A stretch of DNA of 64,000 bases from Phallusia mammillata (taxonomy: Eukaryota). The stretch is taken from assembly GCA_965637545.1 (NCBI GenBank), contig OZ281494.1, forward strand, positions 6,510,001 to 6,574,000, written 5' to 3'. The position numbers and the translations under genes were made by a program. A model generated the notes under the pieces. It had not been told where the DNA came from. It saw nothing but the letters and a program-made list of their open reading frames with translations, and did not search any database. Of this stretch, positions 49,129 to 64,000 are shown piece by piece; positions within the stretch are counted from its first letter, which is position 1; the number at the start of each line of letters is the position of its first letter.

Positions 49129-51387
49129 ATGTATGGTGTAATTTACTGCTGTAAAAATGTCTCGTGTCAATTACTGCTTTTTCTGTTCGGATTTATCGGT
49201 AAGTCAAGAAAAACTGGTTGTATAACGGAAATTGACAATTTAATAAATTTTTTCAGCCTATGCAGCCGCCATTTGTGTACCGTTCGCCACTGCTGGTGAC
49301 TCTGGGTATTTGGTTCACGCATCACACAGTGGTGGTTCTGTTGGAGAATGCAAATGGCGATTGGATGATGCCTATTTGGGCAGCAGTTCAAACCGCATCA
49401 TGGTTTTCAAAGTTCTGAAAGGAAACATATTTTCTTCAGATTCTGTGTTCAACTTTTGGCTGCCTGACAATCCAGGTAAGCCAGCAATGCTTGTATCTAT
49501 AACCTCTAAAATTTTATAGTAACCTGAAGCTTTCTGTACACTTAGATCAGTTTTCGTTTTTTGTTTTGCAATGTTATATAAATGATTTCGCCGATTTAAA
49601 GATAATCTAAGTTCTAAGCAAGAAATGAATACCACATGTGTTTTACTTTGCCAGGAAAAGCCTATTCTCGATCTGATAGTCCGTGGTGTCGTGTCTACAT
49701 GAAATCCGGTTCTGATGCAAAACTGTGCAGAAGTGTACTTCGGACAAAACATTTGTGCAACAGTGGCATGAAAACATTAACAACTTGGCCACCACCAATC
49801 ACAACTGGTTTTCGAAGATTTTCTGCTTTGATGTCATATCAATTTGATGACTGCAAAGCTGATGCACCGACCCAAGCAACTCCAAATTCAGGTAGACGGT
49901 CCAATAAAAAAAAAACACTAGACAGATCTAAATACGTACCTTGATTTTCATTCATTGGTTTTGAACAATGCTGGTTTTAATCAAAAAAGATAATACCGGT
50001 TGCATCAAACATCTCGGTAGGGCGTTTGTTCAAATTTTCAAGTATTTAGCACTACCTAGTCAAGCAGTGGTCATGTGTCAACTACAGTTTCCATCAAGTT
50101 TAGGTTAAAAAGCTTTAAGTTCCAAACAAACTTTCTTCATATCATAGTTGAGAATGCTGCCGACACCCCCCACACAAAAAAACTGACATTAGATAAAATC
50201 TGCATTTGCAGTGCGTTCGAGCAAAATCTTGACAAAAATTTCAACAACAACAACAAGACCTAAAACAACAACAGCACCACCACCACCAACAACAACAGCA
50301 ATAACGCCTGGAGATATAATTGGAACGGCGGGTGAAAAAATTAATCAAAGTGTGAAGAACACAACATGTGATGTGGTACCACAAGGTACATATTAAAAGC
50401 CGACTCTTTTTTATGCTCCATGTATGTTATTTTATAAATTGATATAATACTATAGTATGCAGATTTTATTTCTGGAACAATAACTATTATCTCAATTAAC
50501 TTTCAAATGAAACGCTAATTTGCATGCTATGATTCAAATGAACTAAATATATACAATATTTGCTGAGTTCATAAGTTAGGTTTCGTATTTAAAGTGTTCT
50601 AGGAAGAAAGTTTAGTGTTTTTAAAACCCACCTTTTATATTGATTTTGTAGTATTTCCATCAACTGGAGCTATATAACAGCGACTATTGTTCTGGCGATA
50701 TTCTGCGTATTGCTCACAATGTCTTTGCTACAAAATCGGCGCCATAATAGATGGTTAAGGTTAGTCAGTGATTTAAAAAACTAAAGGTTTTGAAAGTATT
50801 TTCTCTTCACTTGTTTTCGGATTGTTTTCTGTCGATGTTTACAAAAACAAGTTTGCGAAAACATATCCGCTAAATCAGTGTCAAGTTTTGTGTTTAGAAA
50901 CGCTGCAGTTGCCCAGTTCTCAACACTAAACAGTGCACAACCAAATCATCAGCCTAATTCTTCTGCTGCCTTACAATACGGTCAGAATGTTAGCTACTTT
51001 GAGCATTTTTTATTATTATGCGCAGTGGGGTATTTCGGCTTATACAAGACGGGAAGGCAAAATGTGATGGCCCTAGGCAAATTTTTGATTTTGGCTTTGC
51101 CTCAAATAAAATAACAAAAATAGACAAAGCAGAGAGTCGTTACAAAAAGTACAAAAAATGACCTTATTTTATTTACAACGCAAAGTTGGAAATTGGTCTT
51201 GTCACAACACAAAGTTGCGATGAAAATTGGTCTTGTCATGTGATGTCTATTTAAAGGCTATTTAAAAAGAAGTTCGTTTGCAGATTACGTCAACATTGAA
51301 GTTGTACCTCGGGCCGACTATTCAGATCATCAAGTTTCAATCCCACAACCTGCTGCTGACTATGTGGAGTTTGATGAAACCCATTAA
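49129..51387 (+). CDS. R6: ectodomain subfamily B with type-II TM/tail; a TM-exon frameshift predicts a secreted product or a pseudogene. Exons 49129-49198, 49257-49475, 49655-49891, 50212-50331, 50652-~50759, ~50898-50979, 51284-51387
   Basis: ICVPF...SGYLVH...ECKW...SNRIMVFKVL...FNFWLPDNP; SPWCRVYMKSG...SALMSYQFDDC; Thr/Pro stalk. In the TM exon the spliced frame hits TAA at 50675-50677, while ITATIVLAIFCVLLTMSLLQNRR is in another frame. The last exon reads DYVNIEVVPRADYSDHQVSIPQPAADYVEFDETH*. Confidence 0.75.
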
Positions 51388-54015: not shown

Positions 54016-55857
54016 TTATACGTTAACTGCAGGACGGCTGTACAAATCGTTGTAAACAGTTTTTCGCTCCGTCGAGGGTCCAGTGAGTGGGTTAGATGCG
54101 TTTCCTGGAGTTTGTTGGTTAGGGGGAATGAATAAAGTATCGGTCGCTGCATGAAATGGAAACGGGTGTCCTATGCTTTTTCTTTCCTTTCTACATAATT
54201 AGAGTAATAAAAGACTTCAGTGCTTAGAAAAATCTTATTCTAACGCAATATACATATACTTGTGAATGTATATAGTCTGCAGTAAAGAAAAAAATGCGAG
54301 ATAATAATTGACATAATTTCATACCTTTAAGTTAATTTTATTTATTGTAGTTATTCAGCCAAAAACTTACTTAAATTTCCAAAACATGAACATTAATCCT
54401 GAGCATGCAAGTGTGAGCAGAACAGTTAGAATTACCAGCAAGCACAGTAGGACAGTTGCGTTTGAAGGTGCACTTGGATCTGTGAAATAAAATGATGCAT
54501 TATTGTCGAGCATAATCAGCCAATGACACCAGTTCTGTACCAAACGTTTGTCGCCATGATTCGGTTAAATGAACGCATTTGAGTGGAATCGCTAACTTAA
54601 ACAAGGCCCAATGAGGACAGATGATTGCTACAGTTTTAGGGGGTCGGGGTATTCGTGTCGAGTTTGGTTAAGGATTAACTTGAATTACAAGTTTTCCGAG
54701 TGTGATTTTAATATTGCGACAACTTCATAAATTTTCGGACAGACCAAGGGGTTCACTTCACTTTTACTTCAGGTTCGATCACCAATTATACGAATCACCT
54801 AATTTGGTTGCTTCACTATGTTATTTGACTGGCACCAGCCTTAACTTACCTTCTGCAAATTTTTCACATGACAAACTGGTGTATTTAAAATCAGGTGTGG
54901 TTTCAGTAGTTGGTGTTTTACTGGTTGATGTTGGTGAAAAAACGCTTTTGCAACGGACTGGAATTTTGGTGGTCCCTGGAATCGCTGTGCTTGCTACCAC
55001 AGATGTTGAAATATATTTAGCAGTATGAAAGCAAAATAGTTAGAATCCAAATATTTTGTTTCAGATAAACAAGTTGTAATGCAAACCTATTTGAGAAAGG
55101 TATACACAAAGCATAAATTCTTGTTTCAACAATAACATAGATTACTTTCGCAAAACATCAAATATCATTTTTAAGAAAATTCATGGTCACCTTGAGTTCG
55201 AGTTGTACTGCTGATGGCTTGGGTGTCGCAATCAAATATTTGGTATGACATCACAGCCAATGAATGATAAAACACAGTTGTTAAATTCGGTGACCAACTG
55301 GACAGAGTTTTAATTCCTTCTCTACATAAGTTACTTTTGGTGAGAACATCTTTGCATAATTCTTTGTTGGAGCCTGTTTTCATGTAGACGCGACACCAAG
55401 GACTGTTTGGCGCCGAATACTTTGCTTCTATTTTAGCAAAAACGTAGTTTATTTTCACAACGGCAAAAACAAAACAACTTACCTGGTTGACCAGGCAACC
55501 AAAAATTGAACTCGGATTTTAAGTCGAAAACGACGTTTTCCAAAACTTTGAAAACCAGCAAGCGATTTGAACTGTTGTTCTGTTGAGTGTCATTTAGCTG
55601 CCAGTCACACTTGCTCACTGTATTTTTGCCATATCCGGTGCTGTGCACCAGAATGCCTGAACTATCGGAATTAGGAAAAGGAATGCATAAGCTTGTTGCC
55701 AGTGAAAACAAACCTAAACAAAACTGGCTGAGATGCATTTTTTATGTCTTTCATATTATAATTATATCAAAATGCTATTAATGTAGGCTAATTAACTTAT
55801 AATCTGCCTTTACTTACCGGCAATTGCTGTTAACAAAAGCAGTTTTAATGCCGACAT
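54016..55857 (-). CDS. R7: intact receptor, ectodomain B with type-I tail; exons 55857-55818, 55713-55483, 55427-55191, 54993-54850, 54479-54371, 54190-54016
   Basis: MSALKLLLLTAIAGLFSLATSLCIPFPNSDSSG...KCDW...NRLLVFKVL...FNFWLPGQP; SPWCRVYMKTG...AVMSYQIFDC; stalk; TM VLLCLLVILTVLLTLACSGLMFMFW; single tail exon ...ERKTVYNDLYSRPAVNV*. Confidence 0.85.
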
Positions 55858-55929
55858 TTTTCACAGTACTTCCTGTAAAACTTATGCTCTTAATATCAAG
55901 TCGCACACAGTTGATGAGCTTAAACGTGA

Positions 55930-56040
55930 TATATCGCAGGACTTAGCCGCCACATTCTGCTATTGGTTCGTAAGTTGAGTTAGCGTGTCATCCATAATTT
56001 ATTTGCATAAAGGAGGAAGGACAGTAAGTCAAGATATTTC
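55930..56040 (-). promoter_or_regulatory. conserved upstream block shared by R7 and R8 (second copy ~63430-63545), putative promoter
   Basis: cattctgctattggttcg(t/c)aagtt (contains a CCAAT box) and at(t/a)tgcataaa(g/a)gaggaaggacagt are conserved in both copies; R7 has a perfect octamer ATTTGCAT at 56001-56008. Function is inferred only. Confidence 0.4.
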
Positions 56041-58182
56041 TAACTAAGCTATTCTTGAATGACCTTCTCCGCTTTAAAGTATGAGTTTTGCTGTTGCAAT
56101 CCAGTTTAATTTTTTTTAATCTATTTATTTACATTTTGGCATTAGTTAAGCAACAGGGCAATTCCACTAGGATGAAACTCCGATTAGACTAATTAAGGAA
56201 CTGTGAACGTTATTTTATTTGGTTCCGAAATGCTTTATTGACTCTTTACACGTACAAATTATGTTGTAAAAAATACGCATCGTTAACGGTAACAAAATAA
56301 TTTAAACTCAAACGAAATGGCACATGTTAAAAAAACACGAAATCACACATGTTATGTTTTCAAAAATATACAAATACAATGACATTTTACGTTACGCAAT
56401 GTGGAAATAAGAACCCAATTCTTGTGGTGCATAAAAAGAACTGTTGCATGCAACCTAAAATAAAACAGGTCTAAAACTGTTTTACATATGTTTCTTGCAA
56501 CAAATTATATGTTTTGTAACATTTTTGAAAGCAATTGATATTTGATGACTATTCTGGAGGTGGTTCATCGTAAACGTGGTTTTTAGGAACTTGTCCTTGC
56601 ATTGTAACAGAACAATCGTTATGGTCGTTTTGTGATGGAATTTCCGGTTCGACTCTTCCTGTTAAATGAATCAGATGAAAAAATGGTAAAATACTGTAGT
56701 GTTTGCAACATTTTTATGCCTGTAGAATTTAATAATAACATCAAAAAATGTTGCAACATGGAAGCACACATTTTGCCATAAAAAGTCAATGTTTCGTGGG
56801 ACACTTGCCGTACTCTCTATGAACCGCGTTACTACTCAAAAAGCTCTACCTTATTATTTTAAGGGATCATTACTTATTTGTACCATGATTTGTTGAAAAA
56901 GACACGTAATATAAAGATTGGCGTAACCAGCGATTCATGTCCTCAATAACGGCGTTTCAAAACAAATTTTCTCATCAACAAAGAGTTAAATTTTACCCAT
57001 TGGCTTAGGTGCGCCACAAAACGTAAATCACAACTGACATAGGGGTCCTGAAGTAGGAATGAACCTCACCTTGTTGTAAGGCAGAAGGATAAGGCACGTA
57101 AGCAGCAGAGAAAATAGACTGATGACTTTGTCGTACACTGTTTCTTTTCGACAGCTGGACCATTGGTGGGTTTCTAAACACAAAATGTAAAGCCAAAGCA
57201 ACAAACTTTCAAACCATTCAGTGAATTGTTCTAAGTAATAAACGAGATTTAAACGACATTAATAACAAACCTTACTCTTCGGGTCTGACGCCGATTTTGA
57301 AGCAAAGATACGATAAGCAGTATGCAGAATATGGTCAGCAAAATAGTCGATGTTACAACAACTATTATTTCAGTCAGTGAAAAAACTGAAAATAAAAATT
57401 CGGCATTAAAATACATTTTTTTCGTTTTGCACACCAAAACATGGTAGTTAAAATAGAAAAGTTAACAAAAAACTCAGTTATTCAAATATTTTATATATTT
57501 TTTCTTTATTCGAGTCTTGGCATAAACTACTTTGCGCATCAGTAGAAATTCATTGTGATGCTAGAGCTAACATATGTATACTAAAGTATTATTTGTCAAT
57601 AATAATCAAAGTATACATGTAACATCAAAAGAAGAGATGTCGTCTAAACTTGTTGGCAACATTGTAGATCTAGTTTTCTTTACACTTTATTTGATTTCAC
57701 TTCCTTACAAGATTGACAGACTGTGACGACAGAGTTATGACGGACATTTTTGTAAGGCGTCGAATCTACACTCTACGCTCTACCTGTTGTTGTTGTTGTT
57801 GTTGCTGTTGTGGTTGTCTGTTTGGCTTTCGTTGCGGTACAAATCAAAGGTGTTTTAGTCGTTTCGGTGGTTTCATTTTTTGTCAACCCATTTTCCAAAC
57901 ACACTACAATTCCAGATATAAGTTACTGTCAGTTATTTTGTAATGGGATGAAAATTTCATACCAATAACAGTAATAAAACTTGCAGAGCCTTGCACAAAT
58001 ATTTTACTTAGCACAATTGGTAACATTTAGTTCTGCATTGCATTGTTTTCTAATTTCGTGTAACAGTGAAAATTTGAAATGACGTTTCGTAACTTACTTT
58101 CTTTGAATTGTCTACATGACAAACTGGTGCATTCAGAATACGATGTGATTTTACTCGATGGTGATTTACTGCTAGATGTAGG

Positions 58183-58569
58183 TGTAGAATTCAAGCAGTG
58201 TGCTAATTCTACCTTTCAGTCTCTTGACTGGCAGAATAAGACAGCCGGTTTCAGATGCACTTTATTTTCAGTGATTTAAAACGGATTTTTGACCACCTTA
58301 TTTAAATAGAATCAAAACGTTACAATTACAAACAGTCCAAACAATTTACCTTATATAACATAAAATTATCCACCTCAGCAAAGTTTAATACAACACCACA
58401 GACTTAGATACTGCTGAAACAATGACTGGGCTACACGTGCAGAGACAAGAAACCGAGAAAGCAGGACGTACATAAAGTTGGCAGTTATGTCGTCACAATG
58501 AACGTATAGGTCACGGGTTACAACGGCGGGAAAAGTTTTTGCTATTGGGGAGCGTTACTGTCCGTTACA
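58183..58569 (-). repeat. 3' LTR (387 bp)
   Basis: Direct repeat of 62069-62455; I count 5 mismatches. Confidence 0.95.
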
Positions 58570-58790
58570 TACCGGCCCCTAAATAACGAACGTGGAGACA
58601 AAGTTATTTACACACAACAACAGGAGGACAGAAACGAAACACAAGAAAGTTACGCTGCCTCAAGTAAGCACAGCTTGCGAATATCGCGCGTATATACAGC
58701 TCTCGCGGTGCGAACGCGAACACTTCTGACAGCTCCTTCGCTATCAGGGCACACCACCACCACAATGCCTTTTGGTCAGGCACCTGGGGT

Positions 58791-61700
58791 TCATCTTGTA
58801 CGCGACCAAAACCAGGTCACCGGCCCCAAAGCTCTTCGTTGGTCGTACCCATAAAATTGGCAGGTAGTCGCGAAGCCACCTCTTCCAAAACGTATCTGCC
58901 AGCCACCCAACCGTACGCAGCGTTCCCCGGTAGTCGTCAGCAGTGGCGAACTTGTCCGGGGTAAGGAAACGTCCAGTTCTGGAACAATCATTCTCCTTAT
59001 CTTAACAGCCGTTACCGCAGCGCCTTCCAGATACGGCAATGCGACAGGCCTTACATGGGCCTCACCAGATTTTCCAAACATCAATGAATAGAGAATATAC
59101 CTGACTGAATCAACAAAGCAAAGATAACACACCGCACCGAACCCGGTCTTGCAAGCATTGCAAAAACAGAGCAGCTGTGTTGCAACGAAGACTACGTTGG
59201 GAGGTTTGTAACAACGCAGTGTCAAAAGATTCCAATGCTCGATCGCACTTTCGGAAAGTGGGTTGTCCCAATCCAGTTGCTGGTTGCACAGACTATGCAT
59301 TAGCTGTTTTATAGAAAGCAGAAATGGCTGGATAAATCCAAGCGGGTCGGAGACCTTACTAATCATCGAAAACACTACGACAAGGCCTTTGGTACGGTAA
59401 GACCCTTGTAGCAACTTGTCGTTTAATAATGTTCCATCGTAGGAAGCGGAACAATCGAAAAGAGTTCGAAATTTGCCACCCGTCGCGTGGTGTGGTATAT
59501 TCCGTGTTTGTTTTGTACATTTCAAACTACCTGAAAGGATTCCTGGAGCAAATCCCTGTCTCAAGTAATCCTGTATCTTTTCCCAGTACTTTCCAAGCGG
59601 TTCGGTATACTTGTGGAAGCGACGCTTTAAGTGTGACAGGCGTCGTTTTGCCAAGCTACTGTCATAGGACAGAACCGGGACGGGCAATTTCCAAGGCAAA
59701 ATCTGGTAATGTCCGTTCACTCTAGTGACACTGTTTTCTGTATTTGAAAGAACTCGTTTGTGTTTAAGTGAAAGTCCAAGGTCACTTGAACCTCTATCTT
59801 GAAAGTCAATACTGTATAACTGATCCAACTGATCAGGTAGTTTTGTGTTAGCGTGTATGTAATTTACACTCGTGTGTCTGATGTCATGTTTTCTTTCGGG
59901 GCCGAACAAACACCAGCCCAAACCAGTGCGAATAGCAACAGGGTCGCCACGAGAGCCACGTACAGCCTCGTGTTGCTCATGAGCCTCGTAAACATCGGCT
60001 GCTATGAGCAAGTCCACATCTGGACAATTTATTACAGAGAATTTGAGATTTCGAATATGCGGATACCTCTTAATATCATCAACAGTAGGAATGCTGCCTT
60101 GTAGGTTGGGTAACTTGGGGACGACCCTTAAACTTTTCAACATAAAACAAGCGCCATCGTTCAGGCCTTGTACGGACAGCGAAACTTTGCGACTGCGCAA
60201 TGTTTGTGTTCCGTTTACGGTAGTAATTGTCAAGTTGTCTTCCACACCGCTTAGCCCTAGTTTCTTGGCCAATGCTGCAGAGCACAATGACGTGTCTGAT
60301 CCGTCGTCAAGAAAGGCATGCGTGAAATGGGGTTTACAATTCCTATCCAAAACAGTAACTGGCACGACCTTAAGTCGCACAGAATGAGTCTGCAGTGTCG
60401 CAGCGGATATTCCTGGCAAACCGGCCCCGTCAACTTCCGTTGGATCGCTAGAAGATTGTACAGATAAGCGCGAAGAGTGCGCCCAATGCAATAGCGTGTG
60501 ATGCCTTTTCCCGCAGGAGTCTACACGGCATACATATTTGGACAAACATTTGTCCGCACAATGCTCGGGACGAAAACAATTGAAGCACAGTTTGTTATGA
60601 CGCACTAGCTCAAAACGTTCTTTTACTGGTCGGCTCCTAAAGGCCTCACATTTCCACAAAAAATGTGACGACCCGCATTCGGGGCATGTAGGCGTCCGTC
60701 CCGGTGAGTCGTAATTCACAAAAGACTCTTCATCTGACACTACCGAGTATGTAGTTGTGACTCGATCTGGGAACTTGCCTTTGTTGGTAACTTGTCCTTG
60801 CGACTCGCATTCCTCGTCGGAAATAAACCTCATCAATGGCGATAGAGTGTCCTCTACCAACAATTCCAAAAGATCCAACAACGCTTGAAAGGTCACTGGT
60901 TGATTTCGCAAACGAAGTTCCGAGGATCTAGTGATGAATCGTCTGATTGCAGTATGCGGCAAGCGCTGTACAACAGCCTCAATATTTTGAGGCAGATCAA
61001 GCGTGTATTTACAGTCCCACTGACTGAATATGTAACTTTCTGCAGCTTGTGCACGAAACTGTCGTAAGCCCTTGAAGTCGCTATCCTTCAATTGCGGGCG
61101 TTGTGTCAATCGGTCCATGTGTGCTCTTACAACAAGGTCTAATCTCCCATGTCTCCTCTGGAGTATATCTAATGCTTCCTTGTAACCTAAATCGGGGGGC
61201 ATGCTTTTGCATTCCAAAATGTTGGTCAGAGCATCTTCAGTGCAAAATTCACAGAGATATCCCAGCTTCTCGGCATCAGACAAATACGCCTTATTTATCT
61301 GCCGATCGAAGTCGTTCATAAACTTGTGATAGTCAAGAGGATCGCCGTCGTATTTCATTAAATGCAGTTTCGGTAAATTGAAACCTTGTTTTATAGTTTC
61401 TGCAATTACATACCAATTCTCGGTAGTCGCTGGTGGACCATGAGGGTGAGGTTTTATTGTTGCATTTAGATGTTTTTCTTCAAATGTGCTGGCCCCAGTG
61501 GCCTCTGCGCTGGTGGCAACCACTGGACCTTCTGCCTTAGTTCGGAGGGTTCGAGAAGGCCCGACAGGAACCTGTGACTTGGCTGGTGCAAGTGGTTCGT
61601 CTGTCGGGTTCACATTCGTCTTCTGTTTGTCGTCCCCATGCGAAGGCTCACACGAGTCAAACTCTCTTAAAGTTTCAGCAGCGAATTCTGCCAATTCCTT

Positions 61701-62024
61701 CTCTTGTCGGGCTTTATCAAGCTCGAGTTCCATTTCCAAATTTTGTTCTCTGGCGTTCAGTTCCATTTCCAAATTTTGTTTTCTGGCTTTCAGTTCCATT
61801 TCCAACACTTTGGACTTAATGGCGCATCGACGTTTTAGTTGTTCCATCCTTAACGTTGCAGCTTCGGCCTCACGGCCAGAACGCGAGCTGGCAGTACTTT
61901 TGACACTTAGCACAGAACCTTTAACGGACGGGTCACCGCCGTTAGTTTGTTCATGCCTGACATGATCAATCACGTCAAATAGCTCTTGTGATGTGCTGGG
62001 GATATGTTCTTCCTCGCTTGACAT
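58791..62024 (-). CDS. BEL/Pao Gag-protease polyprotein fused to fragmentary Pol
   Basis: ~1077-codon ORF: coiled-coil N-terminus, LPKLHLMKYDGDPLDYHKF (BEL Gag), CPECGSSHFLWKC / CFNCFRPEHCADKC / CRVDSCGKRHHTLLH, AFLDDGSDTSL. No YxDD RT core and no integrase HHCC/DDE region is visible. Confidence 0.85.
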   Translation of the reverse strand: MSSEEEHIPSTSQELFDVIDHVRHEQTNGGDPSVKGSVLSVKSTASSRSGREAEAATLRMEQLKRRCAIKSKVLEMELKARKQNLEMELNAREQNLEMELELDKARQEKELAEFAAETLREFDSCEPSHGDDKQKTNVNPTDEPLAPAKSQVPVGPSRTLRTKAEGPVVATSAEATGASTFEEKHLNATIKPHPHGPPATTENWYVIAETIKQGFNLPKLHLMKYDGDPLDYHKFMNDFDRQINKAYLSDAEKLGYLCEFCTEDALTNILECKSMPPDLGYKEALDILQRRHGRLDLVVRAHMDRLTQRPQLKDSDFKGLRQFRAQAAESYIFSQWDCKYTLDLPQNIEAVVQRLPHTAIRRFITRSSELRLRNQPVTFQALLDLLELLVEDTLSPLMRFISDEECESQGQVTNKGKFPDRVTTTYSVVSDEESFVNYDSPGRTPTCPECGSSHFLWKCEAFRSRPVKERFELVRHNKLCFNCFRPEHCADKCLSKYVCRVDSCGKRHHTLLHWAHSSRLSVQSSSDPTEVDGAGLPGISAATLQTHSVRLKVVPVTVLDRNCKPHFTHAFLDDGSDTSLCSAALAKKLGLSGVEDNLTITTVNGTQTLRSRKVSLSVQGLNDGACFMLKSLRVVPKLPNLQGSIPTVDDIKRYPHIRNLKFSVINCPDVDLLIAADVYEAHEQHEAVRGSRGDPVAIRTGLGWCLFGPERKHDIRHTSVNYIHANTKLPDQLDQLYSIDFQDRGSSDLGLSLKHKRVLSNTENSVTRVNGHYQILPWKLPVPVLSYDSSLAKRRLSHLKRRFHKYTEPLGKYWEKIQDYLRQGFAPGILSGSLKCTKQTRNIPHHATGGKFRTLFDCSASYDGTLLNDKLLQGSYRTKGLVVVFSMISKVSDPLGFIQPFLLSIKQLMHSLCNQQLDWDNPLSESAIEHWNLLTLRCYKPPNVVFVATQLLCFCNACKTGFGAVCYLCFVDSVRYILYSLMFGKSGEAHVRPVALPYLEGAAVTAVKIRRMIVPELDVSLPRTSSPLLTTTGERCVRLGGWQIRFGRGGFATTCQFYGYDQRRALGPVTWFWSRTR

Positions 62025-62068
62025 CTTTCTCAAGACATTTGAGAAACCAAAGAAGCCGTTTTAAATGA

Positions 62069-62455
62069 TGTAGAATTCAAGCAGTGTGCTAATTCTACCT
62101 TTCAGTCTCTTGACTGGCAGAATAAGACAGCCGGTTTCAGATGCACTTTATTTTCAGTGATTTAAAACGGATTTTTGACCACCATTTTTAAATAGAATCA
62201 AAACGTCACAATTACAAACAGTCCAGACAATTTACCTTATATAACATAAAATTATCCACCTCAGCAAAGTTTAATACAACACCACAGACTTAGATACTGC
62301 TGAAACAATGACTGGGCTACACGTGCAGAGACAAGAAACCGAGAAAGCAGGACGCACATAAAGTTGGCAGTTATGTCGTCACAATGAACGTATAGGTCAC
62401 GGGTTACAACGGCGGGAAAAGTTTTTGCTATTGGGGAGCGTTACTGTCCGTTACA
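62069..62455 (-). repeat. 5' LTR (387 bp)
   Basis: Direct repeat of 58183-58569, followed on the minus strand by a short spacer and a TGGT PBS-like start. Confidence 0.95.
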
Positions 62456-64000
62456 GTAGGTGATAAAACGTTTTTGCAACGGAGTGGAAATTTTGTGGTC
62501 GCCAGGATCGCTGTGCCTGCAGCCACGGATGTGGAAATTATTTAGTTGTATAAGTTGTATAAAAGTAAAATAGTTAGAATCCAAATATATACGTTCAGAT
62601 AAATGTTTTAATGCTAGCCTATTTGAGAAGGGTTGACAAAAATCATGGATTTTGCTTGTTTCAATAATAACATTGATAACTGTTGCAAAACATCAAATAC
62701 ACTTTTTGTCACCTTGAGTTTGAGTTGTAGTGTTGCTGGGTGGGGTGTCGCAATCAAATATTTGGTATGACATCACAGTCAATGAATGATAAAACACAGT
62801 TGTTAAATTTGGTGGCCAAGAAAAAAACAGTTTGTATGCTTTCCCCACATAAGTTATTTTTGTTAAGAACATCTTTGCATAATTCCTTGTCAAAACCTGT
62901 TTTCATGTAGACGCGACGCCAAAGACTGTTGGACGCCGAATACTTTCCTTCCATTACAACAAAAATGTAGTTAAATATTTTAACCAAAAGCAAACCACTT
63001 ACCTGGTTGACCAGGCAACCAAAAGTTGAACTCTGAATTTAAGTCGAAAACGACACTTTCCAGAACTTTGAAAAGCAGCAAGCGATTTGGACTGTTGTAG
63101 TGAGTGTCATTTAGCTGCCAGACACACTTGCTCACTTTATTTTTGCCATACCCCGTGCTGTGAACCAGAATGCCTGAACTATCGGAATTAGGGAAAGGAA
63201 TGCAAACGCTTGCTGCCAGCAAAATCAAACCTAGAAAAAAAAAATTTGTCGTTTAGTTTATAATTATATCAAAGTACTGTTTATGTGATAAAGATCTTGT
63301 ATAACTTACCGGCAAATCCTGTCATTAAATGCAGTTTCGTTGTCGACATATTTCACCACACGAACACGTATTTTATGCTCGTTACTAATCTAACTAATAC
63401 CGACAATAAGCTCGCATAATCGATAACCTACTACGTGACATATTGCAGGTTTATTCGCCGCATTCTGCTATTGGTTCGCAAGTTAAACGTGTCAACCATA
63501 ATTCATATGCATAAAAGAGGAAGGACAGTGATTCAAGATATTTTGAACTAATCTACATTTGTTTGACCTTTCTTCGATTAAAATCTTATTTTACGGCTAA
63601 TTCAGTCCAATAAAGTCATTTCATCCATATTTTATTTTTGATTCATATTTTTATTTTGGAGAGTAGATCGTTGCGTAAAACAACACAGGAATGTTACTGA
63701 ATAGAAAAAATAATTCAGAGGACTAGCAACAATGTAAATTCTTTGTTCGCTTGGAATTGTTTTATTGTTTCTTTACTCGTACTTTTTTCTGTTGTATAAA
63801 ACACGTATCGGGAAAGATAGTGGTCAAAAAGCAAATAATAAAATTCGAAGTTACATGTTAGGTACGGCTGCAGTAAATGAACACAACAAAACCTGATTGC
63901 AGACCTAGGAATTTCGAAAGCTGACAAAACAATGCAAAACGTCGGGATTAGAAAACGTGATCAAGTATGAGCCCAATTGTCGTTGGACTTCACACAAAGT

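What the first reader, a model, noticed from the sequence alone, without database searches (positions are those of the whole stretch)
54841..63570. Visible exon-shuffling breakpoint: R7 and R8 share promoter, ectodomain and first stalk exon but have unrelated TM/tails
R7 (56060 down to 54850) and R8 (63570 down to ~58095, ignoring the retrotransposon) are closely co-linear in upstream DNA, introns and exons. Similarity stops right after the first stalk-exon donor. R7 continues into a type-I TM/tail, while R8 continues into a second Thr-rich stalk and a type-II TM/tail resembling R6. This is direct sequence evidence of how an opposite-tail partner for one ectodomain can arise.
Basis: seen in the sequence. 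Interest (0 to 1): 0.7.

Follow-up and report, generated by a model that had tools for sequence, protein, structure and literature searches.

The report
Receptor gene chimera with visible junction
Two neighbouring sea-squirt receptor genes share their front half and then switch abruptly to unrelated membrane and tail parts, and a leftover piece of a broken exon marks the join; this is a clear but ordinary case of tail-swapping by recombination, and the copy in this window is dead.

Summary
R7 (56088-54836) and R8 (63591-58084, LTR element removed) align at about 80-85%. Similarity ends 8-14 nt after the first stalk-exon donor and is then at chance level.

From 58083 the R8 intron holds a 58-nt relic of the 3' end of an exon 3, followed by the intron, second stalk and TM exon of an "R9-type" gene. 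R9 lies just beyond the window, and R6 is only a distant relative. So R8 is the recombinant: an R7-type front joined to an R9-type gene broken inside exon 3.

The event is old. Four more copies, 4.6 Mb away on the same contig, carry the same junction, and the order R9-type, R8-type, R7-type recurs there, as unequal crossing-over predicts. A second, younger head exchange (A2/C2, 93-96% up to the end of exon 3) shows the process recurs.

R8 here is a pseudogene. It has a Pao/BEL LTR insertion, a net +1 frameshift seen in contigs of four runs, and a lost cysteine. No undisrupted R8 allele was shown, and opposite signalling is untested.

This scan had already noted similar mosaic receptor clusters elsewhere in this genome.

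The parts
54016..55857 (-). R7 gene (R7-type, 'type I' tail). Exons: e1 55857-55818, e2 55713-55483, e3 55424-55191, stalk-1 exon 54993-54850, TM exon 54479-54371, tail exon 54190-54016 (stop included). Open 310-aa model.
   Evidence: GT/AG borders and an open joined frame computed from window coordinates. The tail motif around TVYNDL is conserved in the three other type-I tails.
54836..56088 (-). R7 side of the shared block: promoter, e1-e3, introns 1-3, stalk-1 exon and the first ~8-14 nt of intron 4.
   Evidence: No similarity beyond it.
56089..56300 (-). Upstream stretch of R7 that still aligns with the R8 upstream stretch (63592-63850) at 64%.
   Evidence: z 14.7 against shuffles.
56549..63349 (-). 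R8 pseudogene (R8-type). Exons: e1 63349-63310, e2 63230-63003, e3 62947-62713 (235 nt), stalk-1 exon 62516-62456 plus 58177-58098, stalk-2 exon 57903-57784, TM exon 57385-57271, e7 57173-57070, e8 56658-56549.
   Evidence: borders and frames. Exon homologies.
62816..62833 (-). Net +1 nt in R8 exon 3 (includes a T7 run at 62821-62827), which shifts the frame and leads to a stop inside e3.
   Evidence: frame switch from frame 2 to frame 0. Contigs of four runs from three studies cover it without gaps (table 8, records 7, 15, 22, 31).
62916..62918 (-). Arg codon in R8 where R7, C1, R6 and R9 have the first exon-3 cysteine.
58183..62455 (-). Pao/BEL-type LTR retrotransposon inside the R8 stalk-1 exon. 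LTRs 58183-58569 and 62069-62455; target duplication CCTAC at 58178-58182 and 62456-62460. It holds one 1080-aa ORF (58791-62033) with gag-like DUF1759 and Pao peptidase only.
   Evidence: The LTR family gives at least 740 first-look candidates in the genome, of which 40 were scored.
58084..58097 (-). Junction interval. The first 8 nt after the stalk-1 donor agree with R7; the join lies within the next ~6 nt.
58026..58083 (-). Relic of the last ~58 nt of an R9-type exon 3, now intronic in R8.
   Evidence: Alignment. Identity to R9/A0 exon-3 ends is 82-84%. BLAST.
57150..58025 (-). R9-type-derived part of R8: old intron 3, stalk-2 exon, intron, TM exon and about 120 nt beyond. It is collinear with R9, R10, A0 and C0.
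   Evidence: 62% over 680 nt, E 1e-43.
49129..51387 (+). R6, used for comparison. Open 331-aa model: exons 49129-49198, 49257-49475, 49655-49891, stalk 50212-50386, TM 50652-50759, 50898-50980, 51284-51387.
   Evidence: Only the TM exon, the next exon and part of the stalk match R8.

Best explanation
R8 belongs to an R8-type subfamily made by one illegitimate recombination between two tandem paralogues of a lineage-specific single-pass receptor family. Other agents' notes say the animal is a sea squirt.

The 5' parent was an R7-type gene: promoter, signal exon, two ectodomain exons, stalk-1 exon, then its own TM exon and a tail with a conserved tyrosine motif. It was broken 8-14 nt into intron 4.

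The 3' parent was an R9-type gene: the same kind of head, one Thr-rich stalk exon, and the family's common TM and tail. It was broken inside exon 3, 58 nt before the exon's end.

The join left the exon-3 stump as intron. Because the ectodomain and stalk exons are phase 1-1, splicing from stalk 1 to the old stalk exon keeps the reading frame. The product is the R7-type ectodomain on the other tail, with two stalks.

The gene order R9-type, R8-type, R7-type is what unequal crossing-over (equivalently, a tandem duplication from R9 exon 3 to R7 intron 4) leaves behind.

Shown:
- the junction, the relic, and collinearity with each parent type;
- the shared junction in five copies;
- the repeated gene order.

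Inferred:
- crossing-over as the mechanism;
- later homogenisation of the heads;
- any signalling difference between the tails.

The triplet was later copied to a second place on the same contig, and heads have been exchanged again since (A2/C2). The R8 copy in this window has since died: LTR insertion, frameshift and loss of a cysteine.
For: - **End of R7-R8 homology:** it ends at 54836/58084 and is at chance level beyond.
- **Start of R9-type homology:** R8 58083-57954 aligns with the last ~58 nt of exon 3 plus intron 3 of A0, B0, C0 and R9. The relic is 82-84% identical to R9/A0 exon-3 ends; by eye on the alignment it is clearly less like the R7-type exon-3 end. Collinearity continues through stalk 2 and the TM exon.
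- **Shared junction:** A1, A2, B1 and C1 carry the same junction at 75-83% across it.
- **Gene order:** 0, II, I in both clusters.
- **Upstream homology:** the stretches upstream of the R7 and R8 heads are still homologous at 64%, as a duplication unit running through the intergenic DNA predicts.
- **Frame compatibility:** C1 reads open from e1 through stalk 1, stalk 2 and TM.
- **Head tree:** R9-type heads form the outgroup at 100/100, and R8 groups with A1/B1/C1 at 94/92.
- **Recurrence:** A2 (type II tail) and C2 (type I tail) are 93-96% identical from the upstream DNA to the end of e3 and ~75% from intron 3 on.
Against: - **Clock mismatch.** Noncoding distance between R7-type and R8-type heads is K2P 0.24-0.35 (dS 0.32). 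Between R8-type and R9-type tails it is 0.52-0.59. Same-type pairs between clusters give ~0.25 for both halves. One event with today's R9 lineage as the direct donor should give equal values. So either the heads were homogenised later, or the true 3' donor was an R9-like gene now lost.
- The reciprocal product was not found.
- The break lies suspiciously close to the donor site (within 14 nt).
- No RNA data show that stalk 1 is spliced to stalk 2.
- Every R8-type copy in this assembly carries some lesion.
Confidence: 0.7

Rival explanations
1. A fragment carrying the stalk-1 exon was captured inside exon 3 of an R9-type paralogue, for example during break repair. The promoter-to-e3 similarity to R7-type genes is then due to later gene conversion rather than to the founding event.
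For: - The R8-type head and tail are about equally far from R9-type genes: heads noncoding 0.42-0.51 and dS 0.66-0.73, tails 0.52-0.59. This is what a whole-gene paralogue of R9 would show.
- Head conversion demonstrably occurs (A2/C2).
Against: - It needs two joins instead of one.
- R7-R8 similarity is fairly even from 200 nt upstream through stalk 1, with no inner tract edge at exon 3.
- The gene order 0, II, I is explained for free by crossing-over.
Confidence: 0.15
2. The direction is reversed. R8-type genes came first, and R7-type genes arose from them when everything after stalk 1 was replaced by a foreign TM and tail module.
For: The type-I tail exon is found in only four genes, and the stalk-1 exon only in the nine R7-type and R8-type genes of the genome. 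Their source is unknown.
Against: - The end of R7-R8 homology coincides within ~6 nt with the start of the exon-3 relic. A second, independent break would have had to fall in exactly that interval.
- The relic itself shows that the sequence to its left was joined onto a broken R9-type gene.
Confidence: 0.1
3. The resemblance is an assembly or alignment artefact, or chance.
For: Clusters B and C are 99.94% identical over 14 kb, which could be an assembly duplication.
Against: - E-values reach 0 over 800-1200 nt.
- Short-read-derived contigs of four runs reproduce R8 exons without gaps.
- Five diverged copies share the junction.
Confidence: 0.02

Closest known systems
Vertebrate paired receptors kept in step by recombination or gene conversion: KLRC/NKG2 (PMC3210942), Siglec-11/16 (PMC5701461), Siglec-5/14 (PMC4042635), CEACAM families (PMC2832619)
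   Same: Tandem paralogues share a ligand-binding part and differ in TM and tail. Identity drops sharply before the TM exon. Heads are exchanged repeatedly, and there are many pseudogenes.
   Different: The ectodomain here is not Ig or C-type lectin and matched no family exon by exon. The second tail has neither an ITAM nor a charged TM residue for an adaptor. No ligand, expression or signalling data exist.
Botryllus fester family (FF) and FcoR genes, which 'mix and match' ectodomains and intracellular regions by intergenic recombination within clusters (PMC12582321)
   Same: A tunicate, clustered receptor genes, discordant head and tail histories, tyrosine motifs in the tails, and exchange limited to genes on the same chromosome.
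   Different: The protein family is different (FF and FcoR have Ig-like and Sushi domains). In Botryllus the evidence is discordant trees. Here the physical junction, with a stump of the broken exon, is readable in the DNA.
Lepore / anti-Lepore type fusion genes from unequal crossing-over between tandem paralogues (textbook globin case; from general knowledge)
   Same: The order is parent, chimera, parent. The chimera has the 5' part of the downstream gene and the 3' part of the upstream gene.
   Different: The join is illegitimate (intron against exon, out of register), so it added an exon and left a relic rather than giving an in-register hybrid. The two halves do not show equal age.
Mosaic receptor clusters already noted by this scan in the same genome (s1-403059, CUB-like receptors 10 Mb away; s1-375418, lectin receptors)
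   Same: The same genome and the same theme of swapped heads and tails, with many broken copies.
   Different: Those are other loci. Whether the family is the same was not tested here.

Membership tests
Chimeric gene from unequal crossing-over or tandem duplication | The junction joins sequence of two identifiable parent types. | tested here: met
   R7-type sequence up to 58084; R9-type exon-3 relic, intron and exons from 58083.
Chimeric gene from unequal crossing-over or tandem duplication | Order is upstream parent, chimera, downstream parent. | tested here: met
   R9, R8, R7 here; A0, A1(A2), A3 and B0/C0, B1/C1, B2/C2 in the second cluster.
Chimeric gene from unequal crossing-over or tandem duplication | Both halves are equally diverged from their parents. 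| tested here: not met
   Heads K2P 0.24-0.35 against tails 0.52-0.59. This needs later head homogenisation or a lost donor.
Paired activating/inhibitory receptors (functional class) | Closely similar ectodomains on different TM and tail modules, encoded side by side. | tested here: met
   e2 is 83% identical and e3 57-73% (over two partial matches) at protein level between R7 and R8. Tails are unrelated.
Paired activating/inhibitory receptors (functional class) | One partner has an ITIM. | tested here: inconclusive
   The R7-type tails share a conserved block around TVYNDL. Thr at -2 fits ITSM-like rather than canonical ITIM. No binding data.
Paired activating/inhibitory receptors (functional class) | The other partner has a charged TM residue for an ITAM adaptor, or its own ITAM. 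| tested here: not met
   The R8-type TM has no basic residue. The tail tyrosines lie in YVPY and VYDEP contexts, not YxxL/I pairs.
Paired activating/inhibitory receptors (functional class) | Co-expression on immune cells and a shared ligand. | not testable with these tools
   No RNA run held the stretch.
CUB domain (Pfam PF00431) | Profile match over the domain. | tested here: inconclusive
   Exon-by-exon Pfam scan found no family at E up to 1. PDB sequences, ESM Atlas and 1.8 billion representatives gave nothing credible. The domain is split over two exons, and the joined model was not searched or folded, by rule.
BEL/Pao LTR retrotransposon | LTRs with TG..CA ends, a 5-bp target duplication, and a Pao-type aspartic peptidase. 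| tested here: met
BEL/Pao LTR retrotransposon | Reverse transcriptase and integrase (autonomous copy). | tested here: not met
   Only DUF1759 and Peptidase_A17 were found in the single ORF. The copy belongs to the short size class, with LTRs ~3.8-3.9 kb apart, against ~6.0-6.3 kb in other copies.

The most novel reading that the evidence does not exclude
These genes could be a tunicate-specific paired-receptor system. It would be built on a non-Ig, possibly CUB-like, orphan ectodomain. An ITIM/ITSM-like partner and a partner with a YDEP-type adaptor tail would be generated, and then kept matched in their binding part, by recurrent recombination between neighbours. That would be an independent invention of the vertebrate paired-receptor logic, with the founding junction still readable.
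Probability: 0.2. Interest if true: 0.6.

Novelty: new member of a known kind. Interest (0 to 1): 0.4.

Why it matters
Head and tail re-assortment in receptor clusters is usually inferred from discordant trees. Here the physical join survives: a stump of the broken exon, both parent types still alongside, five descendants, and a second younger exchange in the same family. That makes this a clean teaching case. It is also a handle for dating and testing how partners with different tails arise in an invertebrate chordate.

It does not change the known picture. The copy in this window is a pseudogene, and no function is known for the family.

Tried and rejected
1. **Empty-site allele of R8.** Read laying showed contigs in all four runs that skip exactly 4278 nt, the element plus one target duplication. 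These contigs carry exactly the base differences of the paralogues A1/B1/C1 (58111 T>A, 58141 C>G, and in X1 58148 A>T). The stalk-1 3' half is 90-91% identical to those paralogues. They are therefore cross-laid paralogue contigs, not evidence for an undisrupted R8 allele. The question stays open.
2. **Family identity of the ectodomain.** Pfam on nine exons found nothing relevant. phmmer of exon 3 against 1.84 billion representatives gave two hits, one a VWA-repeat protein matched in 12 short stretches, which I take as spurious. PDB sequences gave E 0.35 or worse. The ESM Atlas gave scores of 0.84 or less.
3. **Joined protein models.** Spliced models were built only inside scripts, from coordinates. 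They were not sent to any search, fold or complex tool, so the CUB lead could not be tested.
4. **R6 frameshift.** I first suspected a frameshift in R6. That was my own mis-set exon border, and R6 gives an open 331-aa model.
5. **Relic in R7-type introns.** Similarity between R7-type intron 4 and the relic or R9 intron 3 was at null level.
6. **Other carriers of the type-I tail or stalk-1 exon.** None were found outside the nine genes.
7. **RNA evidence.** No listed run held the stretch as RNA.
Full report
**What is in the window.** The window is G000:C1:6510001-6574000 of a 240-Mb eukaryotic assembly. It has 35% G+C and short GT-AG introns. Notes of other agents on this genome call it a sea squirt; I did not verify that.

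From about 32 kb on, the window holds a tandem family of small single-pass receptor genes. Each has a signal exon, two ectodomain exons of about 76 aa each with conserved cysteines, one or two Thr-rich stalk exons, a TM exon and one or two tail exons.

R7 gives an open 310-aa model and R6 an open 331-aa model.

**The observation.**
- With the inserted element removed, R7 56088-54836 and R8 63591-58084 are collinear.
- Segment identities are promoter 0.71, e1 0.75, intron 1 0.70, e2 0.90, intron 2 0.73, e3 0.85, intron 3 0.80 and stalk exon 0.78.
- After the donor of the stalk-1 exon, only the first eight intron bases agree.
- Beyond that, the intron 4 of R7 and of the two other R7-type genes scores no better than shuffled sequence against the R8 intron.
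- The TM exon and the following exon of R8 match R6 at 81% and 76%.
- The 5' edge is a step, not an end. Another 200 nt upstream still align at 64% (z 14.7).

**What the junction is made of.** A search of the whole assembly with the R8 3' half and with the R7 head found more copies.
- The next gene beyond the window is R9, with heads at C1:6576110-6577023. R10 lies further on.
- A second cluster lies on the same contig at 1.865-1.975 Mb.
- R8 58083-57954 aligns with the last ~58 nt of exon 3 plus intron 3 of R9, A0, B0 and C0.
- The alignment then continues through the second stalk exon, the next intron, the TM exon and about 130 nt beyond (62% over about 680 nt, E 1e-43).

The first 58 nt are therefore a relic of an exon-3 end. 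The relic is 82-84% identical to R9/A0 exon-3 ends, and on the alignment it looks clearly unlike the R7-type exon-3 end. R9-type genes have one stalk exon and the same class of TM exon, and they lack the stalk-1 exon.

So R8 is an R7-type gene up to 8-14 nt past the stalk-1 donor, joined to an R9-type gene that was broken inside exon 3.

The end of one homology and the start of the other fall within about six bases of each other. This argues for a single join, with the R8 type as the recombinant. R6 is a more distant bearer of the same tail class. Only three short patches align with it, and its last exon is different.

**Age and spread.**
- Four more genes (A1, A2, B1, C1) carry the same junction, at 75-83% identity across it.
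- In both clusters the transcription order is R9-type, R8-type, R7-type.
- That is the order left by unequal crossing-over between an R7-type gene on one chromatid and an R9-type gene on the other. It is equally the order left by a tandem duplication from R9 exon 3 to R7 intron 4.
- That model also predicts homology of the two intergenic stretches, which is seen in part.
- In the head tree, R9-type heads are the outgroup (100/100) and R8 groups with A1/B1/C1 (94/92).
- Clusters B and C are 99.94% identical over 14 kb, and A is about 1% from them. These are very recent copies or an assembly duplication.

**A mismatch I cannot resolve.**
- Noncoding distances between same-type genes of the two clusters are about 0.25 for heads and for tails.
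- R7-type against R8-type heads gives 0.24-0.35 (dS 0.32).
- R8-type against R9-type tails gives 0.52-0.59, close to R7/R8-type against R9-type heads (0.42-0.51; dS 0.66-0.73).
- A single event with the present R9 lineage as donor should give equal ages for the two halves.
- Either the heads of the two types were homogenised after the join, or the 3' donor was an R9-like gene that is now lost.
- Later head exchange is directly visible. A2 (R8-type tail) and C2 (R7-type tail) are 93-96% identical from the upstream DNA to the end of exon 3, and about 75% from intron 3 on.

**State of the genes.** R8 is dead on three counts.
- It carries a 4273-bp Pao/BEL-type LTR element in the stalk-1 exon. The element has 387-bp LTRs that differ at 5 positions, a CCTAC target duplication, and one ORF with only gag-like and peptidase domains. 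It belongs to an abundant young family.
- It has a net +1 nt in exon 3. Contigs of four runs from three studies reproduce this without gaps.
- An Arg replaces a conserved Cys.

In this assembly the other copies are also damaged.
- A1 has an exon 2 of 227 nt.
- B1/C1 read open through the TM exon but have a 2-nt insertion in exon 7.
- A2, A3 and B2/C2 have frameshifts.
- A0 has an in-frame stop in exon 3.

Some of these lesions could be assembly errors, and I could not check them. The ectodomain is under purifying selection (dN/dS 0.25-0.35), while the stalk is nearly neutral (0.82).

**Other haplotypes.** Contigs that skip the element exactly were found in all four runs. They carry the diagnostic bases of A1/B1/C1, so they come from the paralogues. 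Whether an undisrupted R8 allele exists remains open.

**What the proteins might do.**
- The R7-type tail keeps an invariant block around TVYNDL in all four copies, an ITIM/ITSM-like motif.
- The R8-type tail keeps VYDEP-like and YVP motifs. It has no ITAM and no charged TM residue.
- From general knowledge, YxxP and YDEP motifs suit Crk- or Nck-type SH2 domains. This is a lead only.
- Nothing shows that the two tails signal in opposite directions.
- The ectodomain matched no family when searched exon by exon.
- The spliced models were used only inside scripts.

**Comparison and verdict.** The pattern matches vertebrate paired-receptor clusters, where binding domains are homogenised up to a point before the TM exon (PMC3210942, PMC5701461, PMC2832619). 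It also matches the "mix and match" of ectodomains and intracellular parts in Botryllus FF and FcoR genes (PMC12582321). This scan has also noted similar mosaics elsewhere in this genome.

The finding is real and unusually legible, but it is a new member of a known kind.

Noticed in passing
G000:C1:1916500-1930500 and 1961800-1975800 (loci L026/L030 and L027/L031): Two 14-kb stretches 45.3 kb apart are 99.94% identical. A third copy at 1.865 Mb is about 1% different. This is either a very recent segmental duplication or an assembly duplication.
   Followed up: partly
window 58183-62455 and genome-wide: The LTR family is abundant: at least 740 first-look candidates, of which 40 were scored, most at 96-99% identity. 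It comes in two size classes, with LTRs ~3.8-3.9 kb apart (like this copy, gag plus peptidase only) and ~6.0-6.3 kb apart.
   Followed up: partly
window 57865-58047 (records 9 and 10): Run X2 holds two forms of the R8 stalk-2 region. One is identical to the window. The other has 11 differences and one gap in 183 nt, which suggests a second, ~6% diverged haplotype of R8.
   Followed up: no
window 54016-54190; L027:8957-9133; L029:3320-3481: The block GPSTERKTVYNDLYS is invariant in the type-I tails translated here (R7, C2, A3), although the rest of the tail is ~30% diverged.
   Followed up: partly
window 49129-51387 (+): R6 gives an open 331-aa model. Its last exon (YVNI ... YSDH ... YVEF) is unrelated to the last exon of R8, so the 'type II' tail class is itself a mosaic.
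   Followed up: partly
G000:C1:1865232-1865465 (A0 exon 3): There is an in-frame stop inside exon 3 of the R9-type gene A0. R9 itself is open in exons 2 and 3.
   Followed up: no
window 55940-56040 and 63449-63543: A promoter core, including a CCAAT-like box, is conserved at 38-44 of 50 between R7 and R8, while the flanking upstream DNA is ~64%.
   Followed up: no
L027 (C1:1968057-1968141) against L025 (A1:1869074-1869156): The 99%-identical genes A1 and B1/C1 carry different lesions: a 4-nt loss in exon 2 against a 2-nt gain in exon 7. The damage is therefore very recent, or these are assembly indels.
   Followed up: partly
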